Below are positions 1 to 20,740 of a stretch of DNA of 24,530 nt, one piece after another. Source of the DNA: Vitrella brassicaformis CCMP3155 (taxonomy: Eukaryota > Protista > Chromerida). How positions within the stretch are numbered: position 1 is the stretch's first letter; every line of letters begins with the position of its first letter. The stretch is taken from NCBI GenBank assembly GCA_001179505.1, contig CDMY01000746.1, forward strand, positions 1 through 24,530, read 5' to 3'. A program made the translations under genes and the position numbers. The notes beneath the pieces were generated by a model that was given only the letters and a program-made list of their open reading frames with translations, did no database searches and was not told the DNA's origin.

Positions 1-981
1 TGGAGTTCCCGAAGCTGACGACTGTGGTGGTGCCATCGGACAAGGCCAACCTCAGCGGATTCACTAAGGTCAGGGACAGACAGACAGAATGAGACCGACC
101 AGTCATGTGTGTCTCCCTGTGTGTGTGGTGGGTGGGCAGGTGGCCTATGTGTGTCGGTGGTCTCTGCCGAATCTGACGACGTTGACGGTGACCGGCGGCT
201 GCCGCCCTCATCTCAGCCGCAGCGTGACGACCATCACCCACTTCGGCAACCGGCACCACACCGATGTGGCCTATGAGGACGCCAGCCGCATACTCGAAAG
301 CAGCACAGCCGAACACATCAACAGGGAGAAATTTCGGTACGCAATCACAACGCATTCGAGACAGGCACACCGATCTGTGTGTTCTCTGTCTGTCAGCGGT
401 GAGACATTGGGTGTGTATGTGGGCGCCTGGATGAACAACACTGATAAGATGGAATCGGTTGAGGTCACCGACATGCCGGTGGGTGAGGGAAGACACCACA
501 CAGAGTCCATCCATTCTCTCTGTCTGCTGTCCTCTCTTGACAGGTTGATGTGCTGAAGTCCGCCCTGTCCATTTCCCCCGACGGCGGGCTGCCCCACCTC
601 AACCGCCTCACCGACACCAGCGGCCCAGATGCCACCGACCAGACACTCCGCCAGCTCAGGGCACTTCTGCACAAGAAGGGGGCCCCCCTGGCAGATCTGA
701 TAGCGGTGCGGCAGATGGCCGACGGTAGCGGTGGGGATGACGGTGCTGAGGGTGAGGGCAGCGGACAGAAGCGGGCGTATGCGGATCGCTGCCACAGCCC
801 TTAGACAGACAAGAAAGATACCGATGGGGTAAGAGATGCTGGTGTGCGGCACCAGAACTGCCCATCGGCACCTGGATGTGTGTGTGTGTGGTGTGTGCAG
901 GTGTGTTGGGTGACAGACAGACAGACAGACAGACAGCCAGAGGGGCGGGATGGGACTGATAAGGGAGAGAGGGAAGGATGA
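1..981 (+). CDS. 3' part of an F-box/LRR-like family gene (paralogue of the C-terminus of the 15471-20740 gene); 5' end lies outside the window
   Basis: Phase-consistent exons <1-68, 140-336, 397-478, 544-751, 809-828, 901-981 with GT-AG introns. Reads LEFPKLTTVVVPSDKANLSGFTK/VAYVCRWSLPNLTTLTV...DKKDTDG/VCWV...EG*. Same exon sizes as the copy at 15471-16447 except the last exon. If intron 752-808 is retained, the protein stops at 804. Confidence 0.8.
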
Positions 982-1794: not shown

Positions 1795-3328
1795 TCACCA
1801 GTTGTGGAAAGCCCCGCCGGGCAGCCACTCGTCGATGCCGAGGGGGTCGTAAGCAGTTGTCGTGGACTCAGAGCGGCCGCCACGCCGAGGACGTCGCTGA
1901 GTATGGATCTTGGGGCCTCGGCCCTCCCACTCGTATCCGCCCTGTTTCTGGAAGAAAGGGTGTGGTCAGAGATGGTTTCTCTTTTTTCGTTCAGATTCAC
2001 CTGGGCTGCAGGAGGAGGGTTGTTGGGGTCTTTCTTCACACCGTCGGGCATTTGGTTGCACTCTGAGCGCAGCTTGCACTCTGTGGATGCTGTGGATGCT
2101 GTGCAAAAGTTGCGCCGATTCGGAATTTTCCCCCACATGTACTCCGTCCCGGTCTCTCCTGCTGTCTGAAAAGATTTCCAGACAAAGGATGGCGGTGTTT
2201 GTACTTTGTATGTGCATACATACCGGAACGCCATCTGTGCCTTCCTTGTCGCATCCGAAGATCATGCACGTGTTCCCGACACTATAGTGCACATAACAGT
2301 GGGCGCCACTTAGTGGGCATGGCTTGTGTGTGAAGAACTGCTTCTCGAAGGCATCGCAGCCTTCCACTGCACACACACAAACAAGAGTTACTAAAAATTC
2401 AGACAAACAGGAATGTGACAGCCTCTTCTGAAGTTCTTTGTGTCTTCGGGAGGTCCTAAAAGCAGATGGAGACACGCACGGACCGATTGATAAGAGAGTC
2501 GTATGTCACGGGAATGGCATACCTTCTTTCCAATCCTGGTGGCCGGGGAAGAGGTAGAATGCATCGATCCTGGGGGTCGAAGTCTTGTCTCCGATGTTAA
2601 TCCCATACAAAGGCCCGTCTTGCCCGACCATCTAAGTTTCCTAATTACACACCACAGGGGGGCTCTGATGCTGGTGTGCCTCTCGAATCCATACCGACCG
2701 CATTGGGTGACATGCACCACTTTGCTTCGTCCATCCGGCTTTCAGTCTTGAGCCTGGCTTCGTCGTCCTTGGACTTGACGATCGGGACCTCGTATGGGCC
2801 GCTGGCGCAGTCTGGGTCTCGAAGGCACTCGCCGTCACCAGTGCTGATTGACAGATAGAAAATGTCACCAAAATTGAATGTCACATCCGTGATACCACAC
2901 CGAAAACGTACTTCGTGGTCAAAACTGGAGTGCGAACGGCGTCGACGACACAGACATGCTTTTTCAGCTGTGAACCGTCGGATTTCCAACAACCGATGGT
3001 GGATTCTGCCAAAATGATGCAGACTTGTGTGACAGAGTCAGACGTGGTGTTTGAATCTGTCCGTCTCACTGCCTGAGAGGTGGTAGTATTTGTCGTGGAC
3101 GGACTGTCCTGTGGACTCATCCTTGTGGGTGCCGTCCTCCTCTCCCATCCACCCTTTGAAAGCGACCGTACAGGGAATCTTACCAACGCCTGCCATCGTC
3201 TCGTTTGCAGTGGTGAGCGTTGCCACGGGGGCGAAGTGGACATGGTTGTGAGGAAGGGCCTGGCCATCAGACACAAGCAGTGCCGCCGCCACAATGACGA
3301 GACGGAGAACCGAGCAGATGGCCTTCAT
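1795..3328 (-). CDS. Secreted cysteine-rich protein of unknown function (~360 aa, about 9 exons)
   Basis: Signal peptide MKAICSVLRLVIVAAALLVSDGQA. Exons 3328-3184, 3153-3070, 3005-2912, 2843-2699, 2631-2523, 2455-~2410 (donor uncertain), 2366-2224, 2165-2001, 1947-1795 join in phase, with about 12 Cys in the mature part, ending AYDPLGIDEWLPGGAFHNW*. The 30-nt in-frame intron 3183-3154 may be retained. Confidence 0.72.
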
Positions 3329-3386
3329 ATCAGCGGATGCATGCAATTGAAGCTGGCAGCAGCGGTTTCAGGGAGCACCCTAGGGC

Positions 3387-3404
3387 TGCGAGCTAAGCGG
3401 CAGA
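3387..3404. promoter_or_regulatory. Candidate bidirectional-promoter motif TGCGAGCTAAGCGGCAGA
   Basis: 17/18 identical to 10865-10882; both copies lie in short head-to-head intergenic regions. Function is inferred. Confidence 0.4.
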
Positions 3405-3428
3405 TTTTCCTCCTGGCTGTGAGAAGGA

Positions 3429-3462
3429 ATGAAGAGCCGCCACCGATGAAGAGCCGCCACCG
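3429..3462. repeat. Perfect 17-bp tandem duplication (ATGAAGAGCCGCCACCG x2)
   Basis: Units at 3429-3445 and 3446-3462, read directly from the sequence. Confidence 0.95.
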
Positions 3463-3547
3463 CCTCTCTGCCAGCGCAACGCCCGCACCATCTTGCCCGG
3501 CAACCATGCGACGATGCAGATCAAGACGGCACTGTGCACAGCGCTCG

Positions 3548-5423
3548 ATGCCGTACCTGCATCTACTGAGGAGCATGCTGCTTCTCGCAGTCCTCCCCCT
3601 CATCCAGACGCTCGCTTTCGTTCTGCGGCCTGCAAGCCGGTTTGTCTTGCGAAGGCCGGCAGCATTTGATCTCTCGTCAAGGCGGCCATCGCCATCCCTG
3701 CCTGTCCGTCGGGGTCCATCGAGGCGGCCGGCGGTGACGATGGTGTTTGATTCGATAACGTCCAAGATCACGGGCATTCTGGACACCATTCGCGGCGCCG
3801 ACAAGCTGACGGCCGAGAACATCGAGGAGGCTGTGCAGGAGATGCGCAAAGTGCTGCTCGACGCGGACGTCAACTTCCAGGTGAGATGGATGAGAGAGAG
3901 CTTTCAGTCGCCGCACACACATGGACGGATGGATGGATGGATGGATGGATCTCTTCCTTCCTGTTTGGCAGGTGGCCAATTCTCTGGTCAAGGCCGTGAA
4001 GGAGAAGGCGGTAGGCGAGCGGCGCATCGACAATGTCAACCCATCCCAGCAGTTCGTCAAGATCCTCTACGACGAGCTCGTCGACATCATGGGCGGCGAC
4101 GAGGCGCCCATCGCCACCTCAGCCACCGACCAGCCTACCGTCCTTCTGCTGGCAGGGCTGCAGGGAGCCGGCAAGACTACTGCCGCAGCCAAGCTCGCCC
4201 TCTACCTGCAGACGCCCCAGACGAGACTTGACGCGAGCGGAGATGCGGAGGGGGGCGAGGGGGAGGGGGGAAAGGGCACCATGACTAAGCCGCGGAAGGT
4301 GCTGCTGGTGGCTGCTGACGTGTATCGCCCGGCTGCTATCGATCAGCTGCAGATACTGGGCGAGAGAGTTGGGTGTGAGGTCTTCACGATGGGGCAGGAT
4401 GTCGACCCTGTGGACATTGTCAAACAGGGAGTGGCATACGCCAAGGAGCAGGTGCAGTGCATGCCAAGAGGAACGAACAGCAGCACACACGCATCCTCCC
4501 TCTTGTCGGTTCAGGGCTATGACACGGTCATTGTGGACACTGCCGGCCGGCAGGTGGTCGACGACGCCCTCATGGCGGAGCTCAAGCGCATCAAAGAGGC
4601 AGTGCCGCCAGACGAGGTGCTTCTGGTGGTCGACGCCATGACCGGCCAGGAGGCGGCTTTGCTCACACAGACCTTCAACGAGCAGATCGGCATCAGTGGG
4701 GCCATTTTGACCAAGCTGGATGGCGACACGCGAGGCGGCTCGGCCTTGTCAGTGCGGGGTGTGTCTGGCAAGCCCATCAAGTTCGTGGGTGTCGGCGAGG
4801 GCATGGACAAGCTGGAGCCCTTCTACCCCAAACGCATGGCCTCCCGCATCATCGGCATGGGCGACGTCGTGTCGCTGGTCGAGAAGGCGCAGAAGCAGAT
4901 GAGCGAGCGGGACGCCCTGGATCTGACCAAGAGGATTCAGAAAGGGCAATACGACTTCAACGACTTCATGAAGCAGAGCGACATGATCAACAAGATGGGC
5001 TCTGTGGGGCAGTTTCTGTCTTACATTCCCGGCATGAGCAACATGGTCAGCCGTGACCAGATCAAGACCATGAGCAAGAAGTTCCGCAAGTACCGCACCT
5101 TCATCGACGCCATGACAGAGGAAGAGCGTGAGTCGCCCGATCTCTTCACCAAGGAGAAGGGCGCGCAGCAGCGCATGAGGCGGCTGGCTGACGAGACCGA
5201 CGAGCCTATAGAGGAGGTGCAGGGGTTTGTGCGGGACTTCATGAAACAGCGTCGGCAGATGATGCTCATGTCGCGGCAGATGATGGGCGGGGCGGACCTA
5301 GACAAGGCGGCGAGCGGCGACGAGACCGCTCTGCAGACAATGCAGGAGGGGAACAGGAAGCAGAGGAGGGAGGCAGCAAGGAAGGCGGCCAAGAAGAAGA
5401 AGAAACTGACGGGGTTTGGATGA
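3548..5423 (+). CDS. ffh: Plastid signal recognition particle GTPase cpSRP54/Ffh (~573 aa, 3 exons) with bipartite targeting leader
   Basis: Exons 3548-3880, 3972-4451, 4515-5423. SRP GTPase motifs GLQGAGKTT, DTAGR and TKLDGDTRGG; M domain FNDFMKQ..KMG..IPGM; basic tail KKKKKLTGFG as in cyanobacterial/plastid Ffh. N-terminal signal peptide (..LLLAVLPLIQTLA) is followed by Phe and an R/S/P-rich transit peptide. Confidence 0.96.
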
Positions 5424-8764: not shown

Positions 8765-10815
8765 CTACCCGCCTTTGGCCTTGTCCGCCTCTTGGGCATC
8801 CTTGGCCAGTATCTCCGCCTTGAATTCGCGGATCTTCTCGGCAAAGAGTTTGATCTGCTCCTTCTCGACCTGCACTGTCGTCACGTGCCCGCCGTCAACC
8901 ACATGGTGGCCACCGATCCACACGTCCGTCACCTACACACACACGCACACACGCACACACACACACACAGCCCCAAAGAGAGAGGCTTCGTGATCGCTGT
9001 CAGTCAGCCATTCGTTGAGTGTGGGAGTGAGTTGCGGCACCTTTCGTGCGGTGGTGTAGACGAGGTGCGAGATGGGGTCATAGATGGGCAGCAGCTCGTC
9101 GGCGCTCAGATCGACGGCAACCACATCCGCGTACTTGCCGACCTCAAGGGAGCCTGCGGGACAGTCACACACACACACAGATCTCAGGACTGAGGAGAGT
9201 GCTCGTTCGTGGTGCCGTGGGCGAGGCGTGGCGTGCTGTGGCGACCCACCCACCCACCCAGGACGTCGGCTTTGCCCAGTGCCCTGGCGCCGTTGATGGT
9301 GGCCAGCCGAAGTGCGGTGAAGTCGTCGAGAGCAGCGGCGCTGTTGGCCTTCATCTGCACAAACAACCAACACAAGAGAACACAACAAACTCGTTGGCCC
9401 CTCCTGCGTCCTTCCTTGTCTGACCGACCCGACCTTGGCGAGCAGCGAGGCCAGTTGCATTTCTGACATCATGTTGAGTGCGTTGTTGGAGCAGCTGCTG
9501 TCGGTGCCAAGACACACATTGACCCCCCGCCGCAGCAGCTTGACCACGTCACACACACCCGACGCCAGCTTCAGATTCGACCTGACCAACGTCGACACAC
9601 ATCCTCCCCATCTGATCTGAGTGCACTGCACATGTGCTGACGGAGACGGACTTGGGATTGTGGCAGACGTTGACCCCCCTCTCGGCGAGTTTGTCGATCT
9701 CCTCATCGGTCAGCCACACGCAGTGTGCGGCGACGAGCCGCTCGTTGAGGACCCCCGCCCTGTCGAGGCTGTCGATGGCACTGATGCCGTGCTGTGTGTG
9801 GTAGTCGGCCACCTCCTTCTCAGTCTCGTGCAGGTGGGTGTGGAAGGGCACCTGCAGCTCACTGTTGTTGGCACGCGCCAAGGCCGCATGCCACTCCTCA
9901 CCCACTGCACACACACACACACACATAGACATGCAGTGTGGGGCGGGTCGTGTTGTGTGCAGCCACGTGTGCGTCTTCGGTTGGATGGGATGCACGCTTG
10001 CTCTTGCCTGTGTAGCTGGAGTGAGTGACTACGGACGGGGTGATCCAGGGGTCGTTCTTGGCCTTCTCCCGCCGGATGAAGTCTATCGATCCATCCACCA
10101 TCTCCTTGACCTACATGGTATGCAGCAACCACACACATACAGACAGACACCGACACAGACACATTCCCACAACTGTGTGTATGTCTGTGCCGGTCGGCTC
10201 ACTGACTTTGCCCGTTTTGAAGTCGATAACAGCCTCGCCCAGGACGGCCCTGAGCTTTGCCCTCCGGAAGACCTCAGCCGACACATCCGGGATGAAGTAC
10301 ATGTCGTTGACCAGGGTGGTGCCCGTCTTGAGCATCTCGTAGGCCGCCAGCTCGGTGCCGTACTTGACGAAGTCTGGCGAGCAGAACTTGCCCTCGGCCG
10401 GCCAGATGAACTTGTGCAGCCACACCTGCAGCTCCTGGTCGTCGCTGTACCCCCGCAGCATCGTCATCCCGGTGTGTGCGTGGCAGTTGATCAAACCTGA
10501 CACACAGACAACACAGATATATGTCTGTCTGCATGTCTGTGGCCGTTCTTTCTCTCACTCTCTCTCACCAGGGATGAGCGCATGAGTGTCGGAGTGGTCG
10601 ACAACCCTCCTGGCCGTGTGTGTCTTGCCCACATCGTCGTTGGGCACGATGGCGGCGATCCTCTCGCCCTTGATGCACACAGCGTGCCTCTCCAGCACCC
10701 TCGGGGTGTCGCTGTCCACCGGGATCACCCATCTTGCCAGGATGGCCGTGTCATGATCTGTGCCTTCTGACGAGCTCTTGCCTGCTGTCTGCTCGGGCGA
10801 TGCAATGCCATTCAT
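8765..10815 (-). CDS. mtaD: Metal-dependent amidohydrolase, TRZ/ATZ family; 5'-methylthioadenosine/S-adenosylhomocysteine deaminase-like (8 exons)
   Basis: Exons 10815-10569, 10496-10207, 10110-10008, 9904-9652, 9581-9434, 9354-9258, 9153-9041, 8932-8765. Motifs LIPGLINCHAH (HxH), HTHLHET (HxxE), AAHCVWL, NPKSNLKLASG, LGTD, ATINGARALG, GSLEVGKYAD. The family is secure; the exact substrate is inferred. Confidence 0.88.
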
Positions 10816-15434: not shown

Positions 15435-16447
15435 GAATGAGTCCGTCAGTGAGATCAGCGGTCGGTCCTGTCATCCCTCCCTCCCTCTCTTATCGGCAAT
15501 CCCATCCCGCCCCTCTGGCTGTCTGTCTGTCACCCAACACACCTGCACACACCACACACACACACATCCAGGTGCCGATGGGCGCTTCTGGTGCCGCACA
15601 CAAGCATTTCTTACCCCGTCAGTGTCTTTCTTGTCTGTCTAAGGGCTGTGGCAGCGATCCGCATACGCCCGCTTCTGTCCGCTGCCCTCACCCTGAGCAC
15701 CGTCATCCCCACTGCTGCCGTCGGCCATCTGCCGCACCGCTATCAGATCTGCCAGGGGGGCCCCCTTCTTGTGCAGGAGTGCCCTGAGCTGGCGGAGTGT
15801 CTGGTCGGTGGCATCTGGGCCGCTGGTGTCGGTGAGGCGGTTGAGGTGGGGCAGCCCGCCGTCGGAGAGGATGGACAGGGCGGCCTTCAGCACATCAACC
15901 TGTCAAGAGAGGACAGCAGACAGAGAGAATGGATGGACTCTGTGTGGTGTCTTCCCTCAGCCACCGGCATGTCGGTGACCTCAACCGATTCCATCTTGTC
16001 GCTCTTGTTCATCCAGGCGCCCACATACACACCCAATGTCTCACCGCTGACAGACAGACAGAGCACACAGATCGGTGTGCCTGTCTCGAATGCGTTGTGA
16101 TTGCGTACCGAAATTTCTCCCTGTTGATCTCTTCGGCTGTGCTGCTTTCGAGTATGCGGCTGGCGTCCTCGTGGCCCACATCGGTGTGGTGTCCTCCGGC
16201 GTAGTGGGTGCTGGCATTCACGCTGCGGCTGAGATGAGGGCGGCAGCCGCCGGTCACCGTCAGAGACGTCAGATTCGGCAGAGACCACCGACACACATAG
16301 GCTACCTGCCCACCCACCACACACACAGGGAGACGCACATGACTGGTCGGTCTCTGTCTGTGCGTCTGTTGAAAGTCACCTTAGTGAATCCGCTGAGGTT
16401 GGCCTTATCCGACGGCACCACCACAGTCGTCAGCTTCGGGAACTCCA
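15435..16447 (-). repeat. Inverted paralogous block matching window 1-~1010 (exons, introns and 3' flank)
   Basis: The reverse complement starting at 16447 reads TGGAGTTCCCGAAGCTGACGACTGTGGTGGTGCC, identical to position 1 onward. Similarity is high by eye but imperfect, and continues to the (GACT)n region near 1010/15435. Confidence 0.95.
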
Positions 16448-19400
16448 ACATAGCGTCGTCCGGCCGATCGATGCCACACGGACGGGGCGGCTTGAAGCCG
16501 TAGGCCGCCGGCACCTCCGGCAGGTCCACCCGCCCCTCACGCACACGCAGCTCGGCCAACGTCGAGTGCGATGCCTCCAGCACACGCACCACCCCGTTGA
16601 CGGCGAACGGCTGGAGGGAGGGGCTGCGGGGGTGCAGGACGGTGCGTGTGCCGCCGGTGGTGTGGGCCTTGTGCAGCAGGGGGCTCTTGGCCGAGAATAT
16701 GGACGGCGGGTCGGCGTAGTGCTTGACGGCCGGGAGGGTGGGGGGGATGAATGGGGGCCGGATGGCGCCAGTGAGAATCGACGAGAGGGCGTAGGCGAAG
16801 GGCACACACATGGCGCTGTCGGGGGCGCTGTCGAAGGGCGGCGAGGGGCTCATGGACGAGCCAATCTCACGCACACAGCGCCTGCGCCACGGCTGCTTCT
16901 GCACGATTATGCGGGCCTTGTCGGGCTGGCGGGGCGGAGGGGGCTTGATGTCGGCCGTCGAGATGAGTGTCATTCGCGGCGCCCAGAGGCTCGACACGCT
17001 GAGGTCGAATCGGTGCCATTGCGGCTCGCCGGCGATGGTCAGCCGCGTGTGGAACTCCGGCCTGATGACGAGCGAGCGGAAGGCGGAGGCCCACAGGCCC
17101 ACACGGCCGATGATCTCGAGGGTCGTCATGAAGTCGGTCACGCCACACAGACAGTTCTCCGGCAGTGTCGACAGCGTCACAGTCGGTAGCTCGCCGCCCC
17201 CCTGGTCGCCCTTGGCGGCCCTCTTGATGAGCCGATAGGCCGGCGGCTGTGTGGCCCACAGCAGGAACTCGCCGACCATCGTCATCTCGCTAGGCAGCCA
17301 CACGCGGCTGCGGGGCACGCGGTGACAGGGTGGGGGGCCGGTGGAAGCTTGCAGGAAATCATGCAGGAAGGGCTGTGCCAAGGTGAAGTCAATCCTGGAC
17401 TGGATGGACGGAACGCGTCGATTGGCCGCTCGACGGCCCGGTTGGGGCGGTGGCCTGTGAAGGGGCTGCTGCATGCGCATCGGAGGTGCGGACGGGTGAT
17501 GCTGCACCGGAGGGCCCTGCGGCATGAGAAGTGGCACGTGGCCCTGTGGCATGTGGACCTGCGGCACGTGGACCTGCGGCACGTGGACCTGCGCCATATG
17601 CATGGCGAACTGCGCCACTGGCATGCGGATACGCTGTATGGGAGGCTGCTGCTGCTGCTGCTGCTGCACACCGAATGGCATGGGGATTTGCTGCATACGT
17701 CGGTTGGCCACAGGTGGGGTCGGAGGCGGCGTGTGTGGTGGGAGGGGCGGTGTGGGGGGCGGGGGTGTGAGGTCGGTCTCGGCAAAGGCGCCGGGGGGGC
17801 TGGTGAGCTTCTTGAGTCGCCTGAGGTTGTGTTGGTCGGTGAAGTGCCGGGCGATGCGGCAGCCGGGGGGCGTGAGGGCCTCATCCAAGAAGGGCAGCCG
17901 ACGCAAATGCTCGGAGGCTGGCAACCTGACACACACCACAGGAGAAGGAGCACGACGTTGGCACATCCATCCATCCATCCGTCCGTCCACCCCACTGAGT
18001 GTGCTCACTGGTCGATGGCTGTTCGCAGCAAGTCCATCAGGTGATCGTATCGCGGCAGCTGCAGCCTCCCGTAGCCCAGCACCTCCTTGACAAACTCACA
18101 CACACTACCTGACCACACACAGAGACGGACACAGAGAGACCAATGAGGTGCATCCCTCCCTCTGCCTCCCACTGCCTGCCAGTGGCCTACCGGGGAGCCC
18201 CTCGCAGAGCTGGTCTACGTTGGTGTATCTCTTAAAGTCGGCCACAGTTTTGAAGTCGGCCAGACTCAGGTTGTTGCTTGACGCAGGGAGGGTGGGGTTG
18301 TCCACCCACGGCAGCGACTCGTCCCCCTTCAGCAGACACAGCATCGAGTAGCAGAGGCCCTCCAGGTCATCCCTACAGGCAGACAGGCAGCCCTTGGTTG
18401 AGCTCAGTGCGACCGGCCTGCCTGTGCTCACGCACTTGAATGCGGGTGGCTGCTAGGTTAGAGATGCGATGGGTGCGAGGTGGAGGGTGTGCTGGCCACA
18501 CCCTCGCCGGTTGCGGCGGCTGGTCTCGTCATCGTCGCCAGGTTTGGAGCGGACGGGTCGGCACTGCTTCAGGTCCACCAGATAGACACGCTTGCCGTGG
18601 CCGTACTTGACCATCATATTCTGACACAGAGGGAGGGAGGGAGGGAGGAGGAGAGTTGCGCCGTGAGTGATGTGGTGCATTGGCTCTTGTCTTCGGGGGA
18701 GGGGTGCCTACTCTAGGTTTGACGTGTTCGTGGACGAGTCCGTGTGAGTGGAGCTCTCGCAATGAAGGGACCTGCACACACACACACATGACAGACAGAG
18801 AGAGGACGTGACCACCCGACACACAGCTCTCCAGTGCGTGTGTATGAGGGCACACCGCCTCGATGGACAGCTCGAGGATGAGTTTGGCGGGTCGCCAGTC
18901 GTCCCCCTCTTGGCCCTCCGTCTGCCCCGCCGCCCACTGCCGGGCGTAGCGCATTACGCTCTCCAGGTCGCAGTCCAGCTGTTCGTTGACGTAGAAGTCG
19001 ACAGGTGCACTGCCGAAGTCGCCATCCTTGATAGCCCCCTGCTGGACGACCTGCGTCTCATAATGCACTGGCTCCGGGCAGATCGGCAGCTTGGCAGACG
19101 CTGCACACACACGCAGACAGACAACCGGATGGATGGGCTGTCTGTGTGCCTGTATGTCTTCTGTGTGTGTTGGTCACCTTTGAGGTACTGGTACACGAAG
19201 TTCTGGCGTGCTAGACTGCCGAGCGGATGACACTCGAGCGCATTGAAGAGGGTCTTGGGGCCGTACTCTTGGGGCGGTGAGGGGGGCGGGGGAGGGCTGT
19301 CTGACGATGCCGTCGAGGGCGAGTCGCCACCCGACGCTGCAGATGCAGACGCGCCGGTCGCCCCCCTCCCCGCACCCCCACTGCTGCCGGCGCCCTTGCC

Positions 19401-20740
19401 ACCGGCGGCACTGCTCCCGCCGCCGCCGCCCTTCTTGGCGCTGCTGTCTTTGGCGGAACTTGTGCCCTTCTTGCCAAAGTCACGAACGGGGGAGGGGAGA
19501 ACGCGTTGCTGATGATCGAAACAACAGAGAAGCCAGCGTATGTGTATGGGTGTGGGTGTGGGTGTGCGTATGTGCTTTGTCTACCATCTGGCAGATGAGC
19601 TTCCTGGCGTCCTGCCCCTCCTCCCACGACACAACTGGACACACACACAGCAGCACACAGGGTGACTGACCATGGCGCTGCTTTGCGGGTCAGGTAGCTG
19701 ACTTACCTGTGGCCTGTGCGGTGAGCTGATGGACTGACGTCATGGACTGCAGCTCGTACTCCTTGCGAGCACCGACACGAAGCGGCATACACAACAAGTT
19801 GAGCCGGGGATTCGCCTCCCAGAACAGGAAAAACGGGCTCTGTAAGATACACCGTCCATCGTGTATGTGTCACCCCAGTCCTGTCCTGTCCTGTATGTGA
19901 TGTGATATGTGTTGCCCCAGGGAAGGGCTCACTCACTGGCTCTTGCTGTACTCGGTCATCGACCTTCCCATCACCCTCCTGCTGCTTCTGCTTATCGGTG
20001 GCACCCCCCACACCCTCACCGCCGCCCTGCTGCTCGTCAGCACCACCCGCACCATCACCATCACCCGCAGCAGCAGCCGCGCCCAGCGCCATGGCTGTCT
20101 GCTGCTGTGCGACACCACTGGCCTGCTGGTCCTGGTTCTGGAGTAGGGAAGCAGCGAGGTCCGGGGACGACTTGACGCGCCGCAGCAGAGGTGCCGTGTC
20201 GCTGTCCTCGAGCGATGGGTGGCCGGCGAAGGAGCGGCTGCGCTTCAGCTGGTGCTTCTTGGGGGTGGGTATGGCGGCTTGGTGGCTGCCCTGTGTGCTG
20301 TGTATGCGGCGGACGGCCTCCCTCACCAAAGCCAACAACACACGCTCCATCACACCGCCACTCGCCTCGACCTTGGCGGCCTCTCCATCCAGCTGCTTAG
20401 CACCAGCCGCCCCCTCCTGACCATCGCTGGCCTCCTCCGTGTTGTGCATGCGGCGGACGGCCTCTCTCACGAGCACCTCTAACACACGCTCCACCACGCT
20501 GCGAGTCGCCTGTCCATCGAGCTGCTTGGCGTCTGCCGCATCATGCTGTCCGCTGCTTGCCTTCGATTGTCCGCCCTGAGGTCCCATCGGCAGATCGCTC
20601 GTCGGCTGAGCCTTATAATTATCATCGATATGAGGGTCGTTGTGAGGCAAAGAGAGTGGCGGGTGGGCCGCTGGGGCGCCGCTGCCGCCTCGTGTGGCGC
20701 CGTTGAGTGCCTCTTTGCCCGGGCTGCTGCCATCGGTCAT
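15471..20740 (-). CDS. CK1-like pseudokinase - Pro/Gln linker - F-box - LRR-like fusion (15 exons, ~1400 codons); the preferred model has one in-frame TAG, so it may be a pseudogene or alternatively spliced
   Basis: Exons 20740-19937, 19839-19707, 19634-19585, 19508-19178, 19100-18856, 18771-18712, 18620-18436, 18372-18191, 18108-18009, 17925-16380, 16305-16109, 16046-15965, 15899-15692, 15634-15615, 15542-15471, all phase-compatible. CK1-type segments: ELHSHGLVHEHVKPRNMMV, VYLVDLK, KDDLEGLCYSMLCLLKGDESLPW, LCEGLPGSVCEFVKEVLGYGRLQLPRYDHLMDLL. F-box-like segment: LSTLPENCLCGVTDFMTTLEIIGRVGLWASAFRSLV. Confidence 0.75.
17533..17592. repeat. Four 15-bp tandem units (GGCACGTGGACCTGC consensus) encoding QVHVP-type repeats
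   Basis: Units at 17533, 17548, 17563 and 17578; the minus strand reads AQVHVPQVHVPQVHMPQGHVP. Confidence 0.9.

What the first reader, a model, noticed from the sequence alone, without database searches (positions are those of the whole stretch)
15471..20740. Catalytically dead CK1-like domain fused to an F-box/LRR-like E3 adaptor
Seen: one phase-consistent 15-exon model. The CK1-like domain has no Gly-rich loop, a ~75-aa Gly/Ser/Pro insert in the N-lobe, HRD changed to HEH and DFG changed to DLK, but keeps the CK1-type DDLE..Y....L.G..LPW and LCEGLP..F..PRYDHL C-lobe. It is followed by a Pro/Gln linker, an F-box-like motif (~17050-17180) and LRR-like strands. Established: F-boxes recruit substrates to SCF ligases through Skp1, and CK1 commonly primes phosphodegrons for them. 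I know of no characterised CK1-pseudokinase/F-box fusion. Inference: the dead kinase acts as a bait or decoy that captures CK1 substrates or CK1-targeting foreign effectors for ubiquitylation, analogous to integrated decoys in plant immune receptors, within an expanding, diversifying family.
Basis: partly seen in the sequence, partly recalled or inferred. Interest (0 to 1): 0.7.

Follow-up and report, generated by a model that had tools for sequence, protein, structure and literature searches.

The report
CK1-like pseudokinase fused to F-box
This Vitrella brassicaformis gene belongs to a small lineage-specific family joining a degenerate casein-kinase-1-like domain to a divergent F-box that is predicted to dock on Skp1, but this copy carries a premature stop codon inside the kinase-like domain.

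Summary
The minus-strand gene at 20740-15639 has a CK1-group kinase-like C-lobe with HRD changed to HEH and DFG changed to DLK. It has no Gly-rich loop, a Gly/Ser/Pro insert, a Pro/Gln linker and an F-box-like motif at 17180-17046.

The fusion is supported in paralogs by an MMETSP transcript ORF (P0001) and by public gene models (CEM24028.1, CEM08872.1).

Pfam does not call the F-box. Three other results support it:
- A profile match to 15 Vitrella F-boxes gives E 2e-5, well above shuffled controls.
- A modelled complex with Vitrella Skp1 scores 0.83 against a best control of 0.05.
- dN/dS on that segment is 0.20.

Several points do not hold:
- A homology-guided model has 13 exons, not 15, and ends at 15639.
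- This copy has an in-frame TAG (18455-18453, codon 597 of 1391) inside the activation-segment exon. Two DNA read sets confirm it, so the locus probably does not make the full fusion.
- The LRR-like part has only weak support, and the N-lobe cannot be detected by sequence.
- The decoy idea is untested.

First-stage notes exist for two other stretches of this genome with the same architecture. I call this a new variant of a known kind, of moderate interest.

The parts
19937..20740 (-). Exon 1 (268 codons). It encodes the N-terminal region, which has two ~45-aa repeats (AKQLDG..VMERVL..LVREAVRRIH) and an acidic/Gly-rich tail.
   Evidence: ORF and start ATG. It aligns to residues 1-207 of the public paralog model P0027 at 80% identity. 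The donor is GTGAGT. There is a weak, sub-threshold CENP-X hit.
19585..19839 (-). Exons 2 (19839-19707) and 3 (19634-19585). They are the putative degenerate N-lobe remnant (..LRVGARKEYELQSM.., VVSWEEGQDARKLICQM) and have no Gly-rich loop.
   Evidence: They align to P0002 and P0027. Splice sites and phases check out. No solved kinase is detectable by sequence, so the N-lobe assignment is inference.
19178..19508 (-). Exon 4. It holds the Gly/Ser/Pro-rich insert, followed by YGPKTLFNALECHP..QNFVYQYLK, the equivalent of the hinge/alphaD.
   Evidence: Translation, alignment to P0002, P0003 and P0027, and phases.
18712..19100 (-). Exons 5 (19100-18856) and 6 (18771-18712). They cover alphaE and the catalytic loop LHSHGLVHEHVKPR, in which HRD is replaced by HEH (18732-18724) while the loop Lys is kept; the loop Asn (N of NMM) lies in exon 7.
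   Evidence: Translation. Weak Pkinase matches over this loop in the paralogs: 19.6 and 15.8 bits, against a cut-off of 31.7. CK1/VRK alignment.
18436..18620 (-). Exon 7. It covers the DFG-equivalent DLK (18575-18567) and the activation segment HLAPIA..PPAFK. It is interrupted by an in-frame TAG at 18455-18453 (codon 597).
   Evidence: Codon view. In the DNA alignment of five copies, C189 has TAC and C576 has GCC at that codon. Logan contigs of runs X3 and X4 cover 18201-18550 with no differences.
18009..18372 (-). Exons 8 (18372-18191) and 9 (18108-18009). They form the CK1-type C-lobe: DDLEGLCYSMLCLLKGDESLPW, LCEGLPG and PRYDHLMDLLRTAIDQ.
   Evidence: The solved-structure hits below E 0.45 are all CK1 chains. 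Alignment to P0001, P0003 and P0027. Splice contexts.
16380..17925 (-). Exon 10 (1546 nt). It holds the conserved LPASEHLRRLPFLDEAL segment, a Pro/Gln-rich linker (~17700-17310), the F-box-like motif and a Pro-rich beta-strand region.
   Evidence: The reading frame is open throughout. Junction 18009|17925 is canonical and is present in the transcript ORF P0001. Paralog alignment is A2.
17046..17180 (-). F-box-like motif: VTLSTLPENCLCGVTDFMTTLEIIGRVGLWASAFRSLVIRPEF.
   Evidence: - hhalign against 15 Vitrella F-box segments gives probability 77% and E 2e-5 over 45 of 47 template columns.
- In 200 column shuffles the highest score was 17.0 against a real score of 25.5.
- The complex with Vitrella Skp1 scores ipSAE 0.83 against a best control of 0.05, and the contacts fall on exactly these residues.
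- dN/dS is 0.20 against the most diverged copy.
- The ESM-Atlas feature neighbours are F-box proteins.
- Pfam does not detect it.
15639..16305 (-). Exons 11 (16305-16109), 12 (16046-15965) and 13 (15899-15639, stop TGA... at 15641-15639). This is the C-terminal LRR-like region (LPNLTSLTVTG, LPHLNRLTD).
   Evidence: Two minus-strand GT-AG splices, 16109|16046 and 15965|15899, appear in contigs of run X1, which is guessed to be RNA. Identity to the C-terminus of P0001 is 93-100%. Similarity to BspA-type LRR units is weak.

Best explanation
The locus is one member of a small family of about 5-7 loci on 5 contigs. No relative outside Vitrella brassicaformis was found at E <= 1e-10.

Family members encode the following parts in order: an N-terminal repeat region, a CK1-group kinase-like domain predicted to be catalytically inactive, a variable low-complexity linker, a divergent F-box, and a C-terminal region with a few LRR-like units.

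The kinase-like domain lacks a Gly-rich loop and has the catalytic Asp replaced (HRD to HEH). DFG is changed to DLK, with the Asp retained. A large insert sits at the hinge.

The most likely mechanism for intact members is an SCF substrate receptor. The F-box would dock on Skp1, while the pseudokinase domain and/or the LRR-like tail hold the ligand. This is inferred, not shown.

The window's own copy is transcribed at least at its 3' end. It carries a TAG at codon 597 of 1391, inside the activation-segment exon and upstream of the F-box. It is therefore most likely a recently disabled or truncated copy that does not yield the full fusion protein.
For: Kinase-like domain:
- The window's exon 8 hits only CK1 chains below E 0.45.
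- The paralog's domain hits VRK1 at 6e-10 and CK1 delta at 8e-9, and the top 47 hits are all CK1-group.
- HEH and DLK are read directly from the sequence.

Fusion:
- The MMETSP transcript ORF P0001 runs from the kinase-like domain across 'RTAIDQ|LPASEH' to the C-terminus.
- The public models P0027 (1358 aa) and P0003 (1084 aa) have the same layout.
- The window has 13 exons in phase, all introns are GT-AG and 62-97 nt long.
- Two 3' splices are seen in contigs of run X1.

F-box:
- hhalign gives E 2e-5, and the shuffle control supports it.
- The Skp1 complex scores 0.83 in three runs against a best control of 0.05. That mark was reached by 51 of 78 solved complexes and 2 of 108 mismatched pairs. 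Runs agree in at least 81% of contacts and the partner's pLDDT is at least 57. The interface falls on the motif and on Skp1 residues 98-161.
- dN/dS is 0.20 on the motif and 0.71 downstream.

Lineage restriction: only 5 of 1.84 billion representative proteins match the C-terminal module.

TAG: with DNA contigs of two runs identical to the window over it.
Against: - Pfam F-box and LRR models do not hit, even at E <= 10. An F-box-like HMM scan of the genome misses the family.
- Both AlphaFold models failed, with pLDDT 28 and 35, so no fold is shown.
- The Skp1 pass may reflect remembered Skp1/F-box complexes. It shows likeness, not binding.
- dN/dS over most of the gene is 0.3-0.9, and introns are 90-97% identical between copies. 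Much of the conservation is therefore just recent duplication.
- P0001 is a mosaic of three genomic copies and may be a chimeric assembly.
- No RNA evidence covers exon 7 or junction 18009|17925 of this copy. An alternative pair of mini-introns (49 and 59 nt) could in principle skip the TAG.
Confidence: 0.6

Rival explanations
1. This locus is an intact 15-exon gene whose dead CK1 domain acts as an integrated bait or decoy. It would capture CK1 substrates or CK1-targeting effectors for SCF-dependent ubiquitylation.
For: - The architecture and the F-box likeness are supported.
- The C-lobe exon 8, which in CK1 lines the substrate groove, is the most divergent part between copies, at 33-72% amino-acid identity.
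- A 49-nt GT..AG interval across the TAG, together with an alternative GTGAGC donor, would keep the frame. This is read from the sequence.
Against: - In the transcript ORF P0001 and in models P0003, P0027 and P0030, the homologous stretch is continuous coding sequence that aligns residue for residue with the CK1 activation segment. The TAG therefore lies in an exon.
- A 49-nt intron would be shorter than all 12 introns of the gene, which are 62-97 nt.
- dN/dS in exon 8 is 0.33-0.66, not above 1.
- No data exist on ligands, effectors or immunity.
Confidence: 0.1
2. The C-terminal module is not a working F-box. The proteins would be CK1-derived pseudokinase scaffolds with an orphan protein-interaction domain, and the F-box resemblance would be a helical-motif coincidence or a relic.
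For: There are no Pfam F-box or LRR hits. The hhalign probability is only 77%. The partner's pLDDT in the complex is only 58-60. No structure could be obtained. The module has no relatives outside Vitrella.
Against: - The profile match covers the whole F-box model and lies about 8 SD above shuffles.
- The predicted interface uses the canonical Skp1 C-terminal helices and the LP..C..V..F core of the motif, while the controls score 0.05 or less.
- The motif is the most constrained part of the module.
- The ESM feature neighbours are F-box proteins.
Confidence: 0.2
3. The kinase-like domain retains atypical activity or nucleotide binding, and the F-box mainly controls the protein's own turnover. 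This is as proposed for Dictyostelium MEKKalpha, whose F-box/WD40 region governs its stability.
For: The DFG Asp, the catalytic-loop Lys and Asn (HEHVKPRN) are retained. A kinase with an F-box is on record (PMC5666861).
Against: The catalytic Asp is replaced by His. No Gly-rich loop is present and no VAIK Lys is recognisable. The N-lobe is undetectable by sequence. Pkinase scores are far below the cut-off.
Confidence: 0.1

Closest known systems
CK1-group protein kinases (CK1 delta/gamma, VRK1; the pseudokinase VRK3 from own knowledge)
   Same: The C-lobe is homologous. The catalytic-loop scaffold, the activation segment (YASINTH.. aligns with LAPIAMH..), DDLE, LPW, the LC.G.P motif and the P.Y..L end all align. 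E-values are 6e-10 to 1e-8 for the paralog domain.
   Different: HRD is changed to HEH and DFG to DLK. The SIN motif is degenerate. There is no Gly-rich loop. The insert exon (about 110 aa, roughly 75 of them Gly/Ser/Pro-rich) sits at the hinge. The N-lobe is not detectable. The score is below Pfam's Pkinase cut-off. The domain is fused to about 660 further residues.
F-box/LRR proteins (FBXL type, SCF substrate receptors)
   Same: There is a ~45-residue LPxxC/L..V..F...RV..W..AFRSL motif that matches genuine Vitrella F-boxes and is modelled onto Skp1's C-terminal helices. Beta-strand-rich, LRR-like units follow it.
   Different: No Pfam model detects it. The F-box lies about 900 residues from the N-terminus, behind a kinase-like domain. 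The repeat region is irregular and Pro-rich, and only about two units resemble BspA-type LRRs.
Dictyostelium MEKKalpha (MAP3K with F-box and WD40 repeats; PMC5666861)
   Same: A protein-kinase-fold domain and an F-box lie in one polypeptide.
   Different: MEKKalpha is an active STE-group kinase with WD40 repeats. Here the domain is CK1-group, predicted inactive, and has an LRR-like tail. The two show no sequence relationship.
Tribbles pseudokinases (TRIB1-3), adaptors for the COP1 E3 ligase (PMC8198994, title and abstract only; the mechanism is from own knowledge)
   Same: They share the concept of a pseudokinase domain used as a protein-binding module coupled to a ubiquitin ligase.
   Different: Tribbles are CAMK-like and recruit COP1 through a short C-terminal peptide. 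They have no F-box and do not act through SCF.

Membership tests
Protein kinase superfamily, CK1 group | Significant sequence similarity of the catalytic domain to CK1/VRK kinases | tested here: met
   P0003:30-340 hits VRK1 at 6.3e-10 and CK1 delta at 8e-9 over 170-190 residues. The window's exon 8 hits only CK1 chains below E 0.45, with a best E of 0.011.
Protein kinase superfamily, CK1 group | Pfam Pkinase (PF00069) at or above the gathering score | tested here: not met
   Scores are 15.0-19.6 bits against a cut-off of 31.7 for P0001, P0003, P0027 and P0030. Exon by exon, nothing is found.
Protein kinase superfamily, CK1 group | Catalytic residues: Gly-rich loop GxGxxG, HRD Asp and DFG Asp | tested here: not met
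   Exons 2-3 contain no GxGxxG. The catalytic loop reads HEH, with the Asp changed to His. DFG reads DLK, with the Asp kept. The N-lobe has no detectable similarity to solved kinases.
F-box proteins | Match to Pfam F-box (PF00646) or F-box-like (PF12937) | tested here: not met
   There is no hit at E <= 10 on P0001:330-839 or on the full-length paralogs. The PF12937 scan of the genome finds 18 sites, none of them in this family.
F-box proteins | Profile-level similarity to genuine F-box domains across the whole motif | tested here: met
   hhalign of the family profile against 15 Vitrella F-box segments gives probability 77% and E 2e-5, with query 59-104 aligned to template columns 1-45 of 47. 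In 200 column shuffles the mean was 10.5 and the maximum 17.0, against a real score of 25.5.
F-box proteins | Binding to Skp1 | not testable with these tools
   Only a model is available. ESMFold2 with Vitrella Skp1 (P0007) gives ipSAE 0.83 against a best control of 0.05. The interface falls on the motif and on Skp1 residues 98-161. This supports likeness, not binding.
Leucine-rich repeat proteins | Tandem LRR units detectable by an LRR model, or a solenoid fold | tested here: inconclusive
   There are no Pfam LRR hits. About two units resemble BspA-type LRR_5 repeats of P0004, with E 4e-8 in the library search and 3e-5 pairwise. The AlphaFold model is unusable at pLDDT 28.
Integrated decoys of immune receptors (NLR-ID) | A decoy domain embedded in a receptor with a signalling module (NB-ARC/LRR), and an effector that targets the decoy's parent protein | not tested
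   No NB-ARC or related domain was seen in any Pfam scan. No effector or ligand data exist. This is an analogy only.

The most novel reading that the evidence does not exclude
Intact members of this family would be SCF substrate receptors in which a CK1-derived pseudokinase domain is itself the ligand-recognition or regulatory module. The domain sits N-terminal to the F-box. This would be a Tribbles-like pseudokinase-to-E3 coupling hard-wired into an F-box protein. Paralog-specific C-lobe surfaces would give different specificities.
Probability: 0.2. Interest if true: 0.7.

Novelty: new variant of a known kind. Interest (0 to 1): 0.45.

Why it matters
Pseudokinases that feed proteins to ubiquitin ligases are known (Tribbles with COP1), and one active kinase carrying an F-box is known (Dictyostelium MEKKalpha). 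I found no described fusion of a CK1-group pseudokinase with an F-box.

The public Vitrella models of this family are named only 'Casein kinase I' or 'protein kinase domain-containing', and no F-box is called. Recognising the cryptic F-box changes their likely role from kinase to E3 adaptor. It also adds to the picture that protist F-box repertoires are under-detected by standard models.

The weight of this particular locus is limited. The family is confined to one free-living chromerid, no function is shown, and this copy carries a nonsense codon.

Tried and rejected
- **Pfam, exon by exon**: no kinase, F-box or LRR hit, because the pieces are too short and too divergent.
- **Solved-structure sequence searches:** the C-terminal module gave nothing and the putative N-lobe gave nothing.
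- **AlphaFold2:** the C-terminal module (6-row alignment) reached pLDDT 28 and the kinase-like region (5 rows) reached pLDDT 34.8. Both are unusable, so no fold search was run.
- **Reads:** all four runs are Logan contigs. X1 and X2 are only guessed to be RNA and cover little. Nothing bridges 18009|17925 or exon 7 of this copy. Many 'joints' in X3 and X4 fall at CA/TG microsatellites and were ignored.
- **tblastx against the C576 copy:** useless for delimiting exons, because the introns are about 90% identical.
- **dN/dS for exon 5:** computed in the wrong frame and discarded.
- **'STGRPVALSSTKG' as the CK1 GTARY..HLG segment:** rejected. It is a 63-nt intron that is spliced out in P0001, and the true homologue is HLAPIA..PPAFK.
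- **Literature searches** for a Vitrella kinome or CK1 paper, or for a pseudokinase/F-box fusion, found no precedent.
- the window's spliced model was never joined for any search or fold. Searches used single exons by reference, or natural paralog proteins by id.

Full report
**Source and setting**

The window is contig C746 of a 72.7-Mb, 1064-contig assembly. A Skp1 gene of the same genome matches a protein deposited as Vitrella brassicaformis CCMP3155, so the organism is that chromerid alga. The gene lies on the minus strand. Its neighbours are ordinary: an SRP54 gene at about 3080-5420 and an amidohydrolase-like ORF at 8936-9706.

**Gene model**

I first read the three minus-strand frames. 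I then used natural proteins of paralogs as guides:
- P0001, an MMETSP transcript ORF of 839 aa.
- P0002, a JGI protein of 485 aa.
- P0003 (CEM08872.1, 1084 aa) and P0027 (CEM24028.1, 1358 aa).

These gave a 13-exon model:

| Exon | Coordinates (minus strand) |
|---|---|
| 1 | 20740-19937 |
| 2 | 19839-19707 |
| 3 | 19634-19585 |
| 4 | 19508-19178 |
| 5 | 19100-18856 |
| 6 | 18771-18712 |
| 7 | 18620-18436 |
| 8 | 18372-18191 |
| 9 | 18108-18009 |
| 10 | 17925-16380 |
| 11 | 16305-16109 |
| 12 | 16046-15965 |
| 13 | 15899-15639 |

All twelve introns are GT-AG and 62-97 nt long. The phases are consistent and the model has 1391 codons.

Two of the splices, 16109|16046 and 15965|15899, appear as joints in contigs of run X1, a run only guessed to be RNA. 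The model was checked exon by exon. Full-length analyses used the paralogs' database proteins.

**The nonsense codon**

Exon 7 contains an in-frame TAG at 18455-18453, which is codon 597.
- In the DNA alignment of five genomic copies the same codon is TAC in C189 and GCC in C576.
- In P0001, P0003, P0027 and P0030 the stretch is continuous coding sequence.
- That stretch (HLAPIAMHNAEPPAFK|DDLE) aligns position for position with the CK1 activation segment (RYASINTHLGIEQSRR|DDLE). This is my reading of the alignment together with CK1 knowledge.
- Independent Logan contigs of runs X3 and X4 cover 18201-18550 without a single difference. The TAG is therefore in the DNA and is not an assembly slip.

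One possibility is a 49-nt interval across the TAG combined with a shifted donor. I cannot exclude this, because no RNA covers exon 7 of this copy. It is the less likely reading.

The stretch 'CVSTGRPVALSSTKGCLSAC' after PPAFK is a 63-nt intron (18435-18373).

**Kinase-like domain**

- The window's exon 8 hits only CK1 chains among solved structures below E 0.45: 36 distinct sequences, best E 0.011.
- The paralog's region P0003:30-340 hits VRK1 at 6e-10 and CK1 delta, epsilon and gamma, Hrr25 and Yck2 at about 1e-8. All of the top 47 hits are CK1-group.
- Pfam's Pkinase model stays far below its cut-off, at 15-19.6 bits against 31.7.
- Read directly from the sequence, the catalytic loop is LHSHGLVHEHVKPRN. 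HRD has become HEH, while the Lys and Asn are kept.
- The DFG equivalent is VDLKQ, in which the Asp is kept.
- Exons 2-3 contain no GxGxxG.
- Exon 4 carries a Gly/Ser/Pro-rich insert between the beta5-like 'LICQM' and the hinge-like 'YGPKTLF'.
- The N-lobe assignment rests on position only. A solved-structure search with that part found nothing, and the AlphaFold model was unusable.
- A search of the genome with the paralog's C-lobe finds only family members. Canonical CK1 genes do not reach E 0.01 exon by exon.

'Predicted pseudokinase of CK1-group origin' is therefore well founded for the C-lobe.

**Fusion**

The junction 18009|17925 reads CA|GTGAGC...GTGTCAG|G. P0001, a transcript-derived ORF, crosses the equivalent junction ('RTAIDQLPASEH') and continues to the C-terminus. 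The public gene models P0027 and P0003 do the same.

P0001 is a mosaic:
- Residues 210-540 are identical to a C388 copy.
- Residues 754-839 are identical to the window.
- Residues 55-177 are 94-97% identical to C576.

It may be a chimeric assembly or an unassembled copy. It shows the fusion for the family, and shows that window-type 3' exons are expressed. It does not show the junction for this copy.

**F-box**

Evidence against:
- Pfam finds no F-box at E <= 10.
- A genome scan with PF12937 finds 18 sites, none of them in this family.

Evidence for:
- With a local hhalign run, 200 column shuffles gave 10.5 +/- 1.8 (maximum 17.0) against a real score of 25.5. The reversed profile scored 10.3.
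- ESM-Atlas feature neighbours are dominated by F-box proteins, at 0.93-0.96. This is a lead only.
- The segment is the most constrained part of the module. Against the most diverged copy its dN/dS is 0.20, compared with 0.71 downstream.

The complex prediction used Vitrella Skp1 (P0007) and window:16932-17201(-).
- It scored 0.83 in all three runs against a best control of 0.05.
- That mark was reached by 51 of 78 solved complexes and 2 of 108 mismatched pairs.
- The runs agree in at least 81% of contacts, and the partner's pLDDT is at least 57.
- The interface uses partner residues 8-42, which are the motif, and Skp1 residues 98-161.
- Many Skp1/F-box complexes are solved, so this shows likeness to an F-box and not that binding occurs.

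**LRR-like tail and lineage range**

An exhaustive HMMER search of 1.84 billion representatives with the C-terminal module found only five proteins:
- the query's own cluster;
- P0003;
- three weak hits, including a BspA-type LRR protein (P0004, E 4e-8).

About two units (..MLEFPKLTTVVVPSDKANLSGFTK|VAYVCRWSLPNLTSLTV) resemble that protein's repeats, and the resemblance runs across the exon 10/11 junction. AlphaFold gave pLDDT 28. 'LRR-like' is therefore only weakly supported, and the module is an orphan with no strong match outside Vitrella.

**Family and evolution**

Kinase-bearing copies lie on C746, C576, C189 (at a contig end) and twice on C388. Partial copies lie at C388:~55-57 kb, at window 3-801(+) and on C688.

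Introns are 90-97% identical between the window and C576, apart from one at 72% and one that aligned over only 24 of its 63 nt. The copies are therefore young or homogenised by gene conversion.

dN/dS is mostly 0.15-0.9. Exon 8 is the most divergent part, but its ratio is 0.33-0.66. Diversifying selection is not shown.

The linker differs outright. The window has about 165 Pro/Gln-rich residues, where C576 and C388b have about 65 Gly/Ala-rich ones.

**Interpretation**

For intact members, the best-supported mechanism is an SCF substrate receptor. Its F-box would dock on Skp1, and the pseudokinase domain and/or the C-terminal repeats would bind the ligand. Only the likeness of the parts is shown; every functional step is inferred.

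For this locus, the TAG upstream of the C-lobe end and of the F-box makes a full-length product unlikely.

**Comparison with known systems**

- The kinase-like part is a divergent, catalytically degenerate offshoot of the CK1 group. It fails the catalytic-motif and Pfam-threshold tests for a working kinase.
- The F-box part passes profile-level tests but not Pfam-level tests.
- Kinase-plus-F-box has one precedent, Dictyostelium MEKKalpha (PMC5666861).
- The pseudokinase-to-E3 principle is known from Tribbles/COP1.
- I found no described CK1-pseudokinase/F-box fusion.
- The proteins are already in public databases, but under kinase names and without an F-box call.
- The scan's index holds first-reader notes of the same architecture on two other stretches of this genome.

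**Verdict**

This is a new variant of a known kind, of moderate interest.

Noticed in passing
window 3-801 (+): A second, partial family copy sits at the very start of the contig. It has the end of exon 10 and exons 11-13 of the C-terminal module, on the opposite strand, and is 72-100% identical to P0001. The family seems to lie in regions that break the assembly. The C189 copy also ends at a contig edge.
   Followed up: partly
window 17700-17310 (-), compared with L016 and L018: The linker between the kinase-like domain and the F-box is replaced outright between copies. The window has about 165 Pro/Gln-rich residues with VHVPQ repeats. C576 and C388b have about 65 Gly/Ala/Leu-rich residues.
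   Followed up: partly
window 20560-20090 (-): The N-terminal region has two tandem ~45-aa repeats (AKQLDG..A.KVE.SG.VMERVL..LVREAVRRIH), and there are three in the C388b copy. They give sub-threshold CENP-X (histone-fold-like) Pfam hits, with E 1e-3 to 4e-5.
   Followed up: no
G000:C388 ~55-59.6 kb (L018); protein P0030: The public model CEM08882.1 (1660 aa) runs through a tandem partial duplication. It therefore carries one kinase-like domain and two linker-plus-F-box modules. Either this is a real tandem architecture or two genes have been merged.
   Followed up: no
P0001 (MMETSP Transcript_36451): The transcript ORF is a mosaic of three genomic copies: C576-like at the 5' end, identical to C388 in the middle, and identical to the window at the 3' end. 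It is probably a chimeric assembly of paralogous transcripts or a copy missing from the assembly.
   Followed up: partly
window ~3080-5420 (+) and 8936-9706 (-): The neighbours are ordinary: an SRP54 gene with N, GTPase and M domains (E 3e-63) and an amidohydrolase-family fragment (E 5e-14).
   Followed up: no
window 15546-15566, 18770-18790, 19542-19566: CA/TG microsatellites in the 3' flank and in introns attract many spurious 'joints' and loose ends in the DNA contigs of runs X3 and X4. They are not rearrangements.
   Followed up: no
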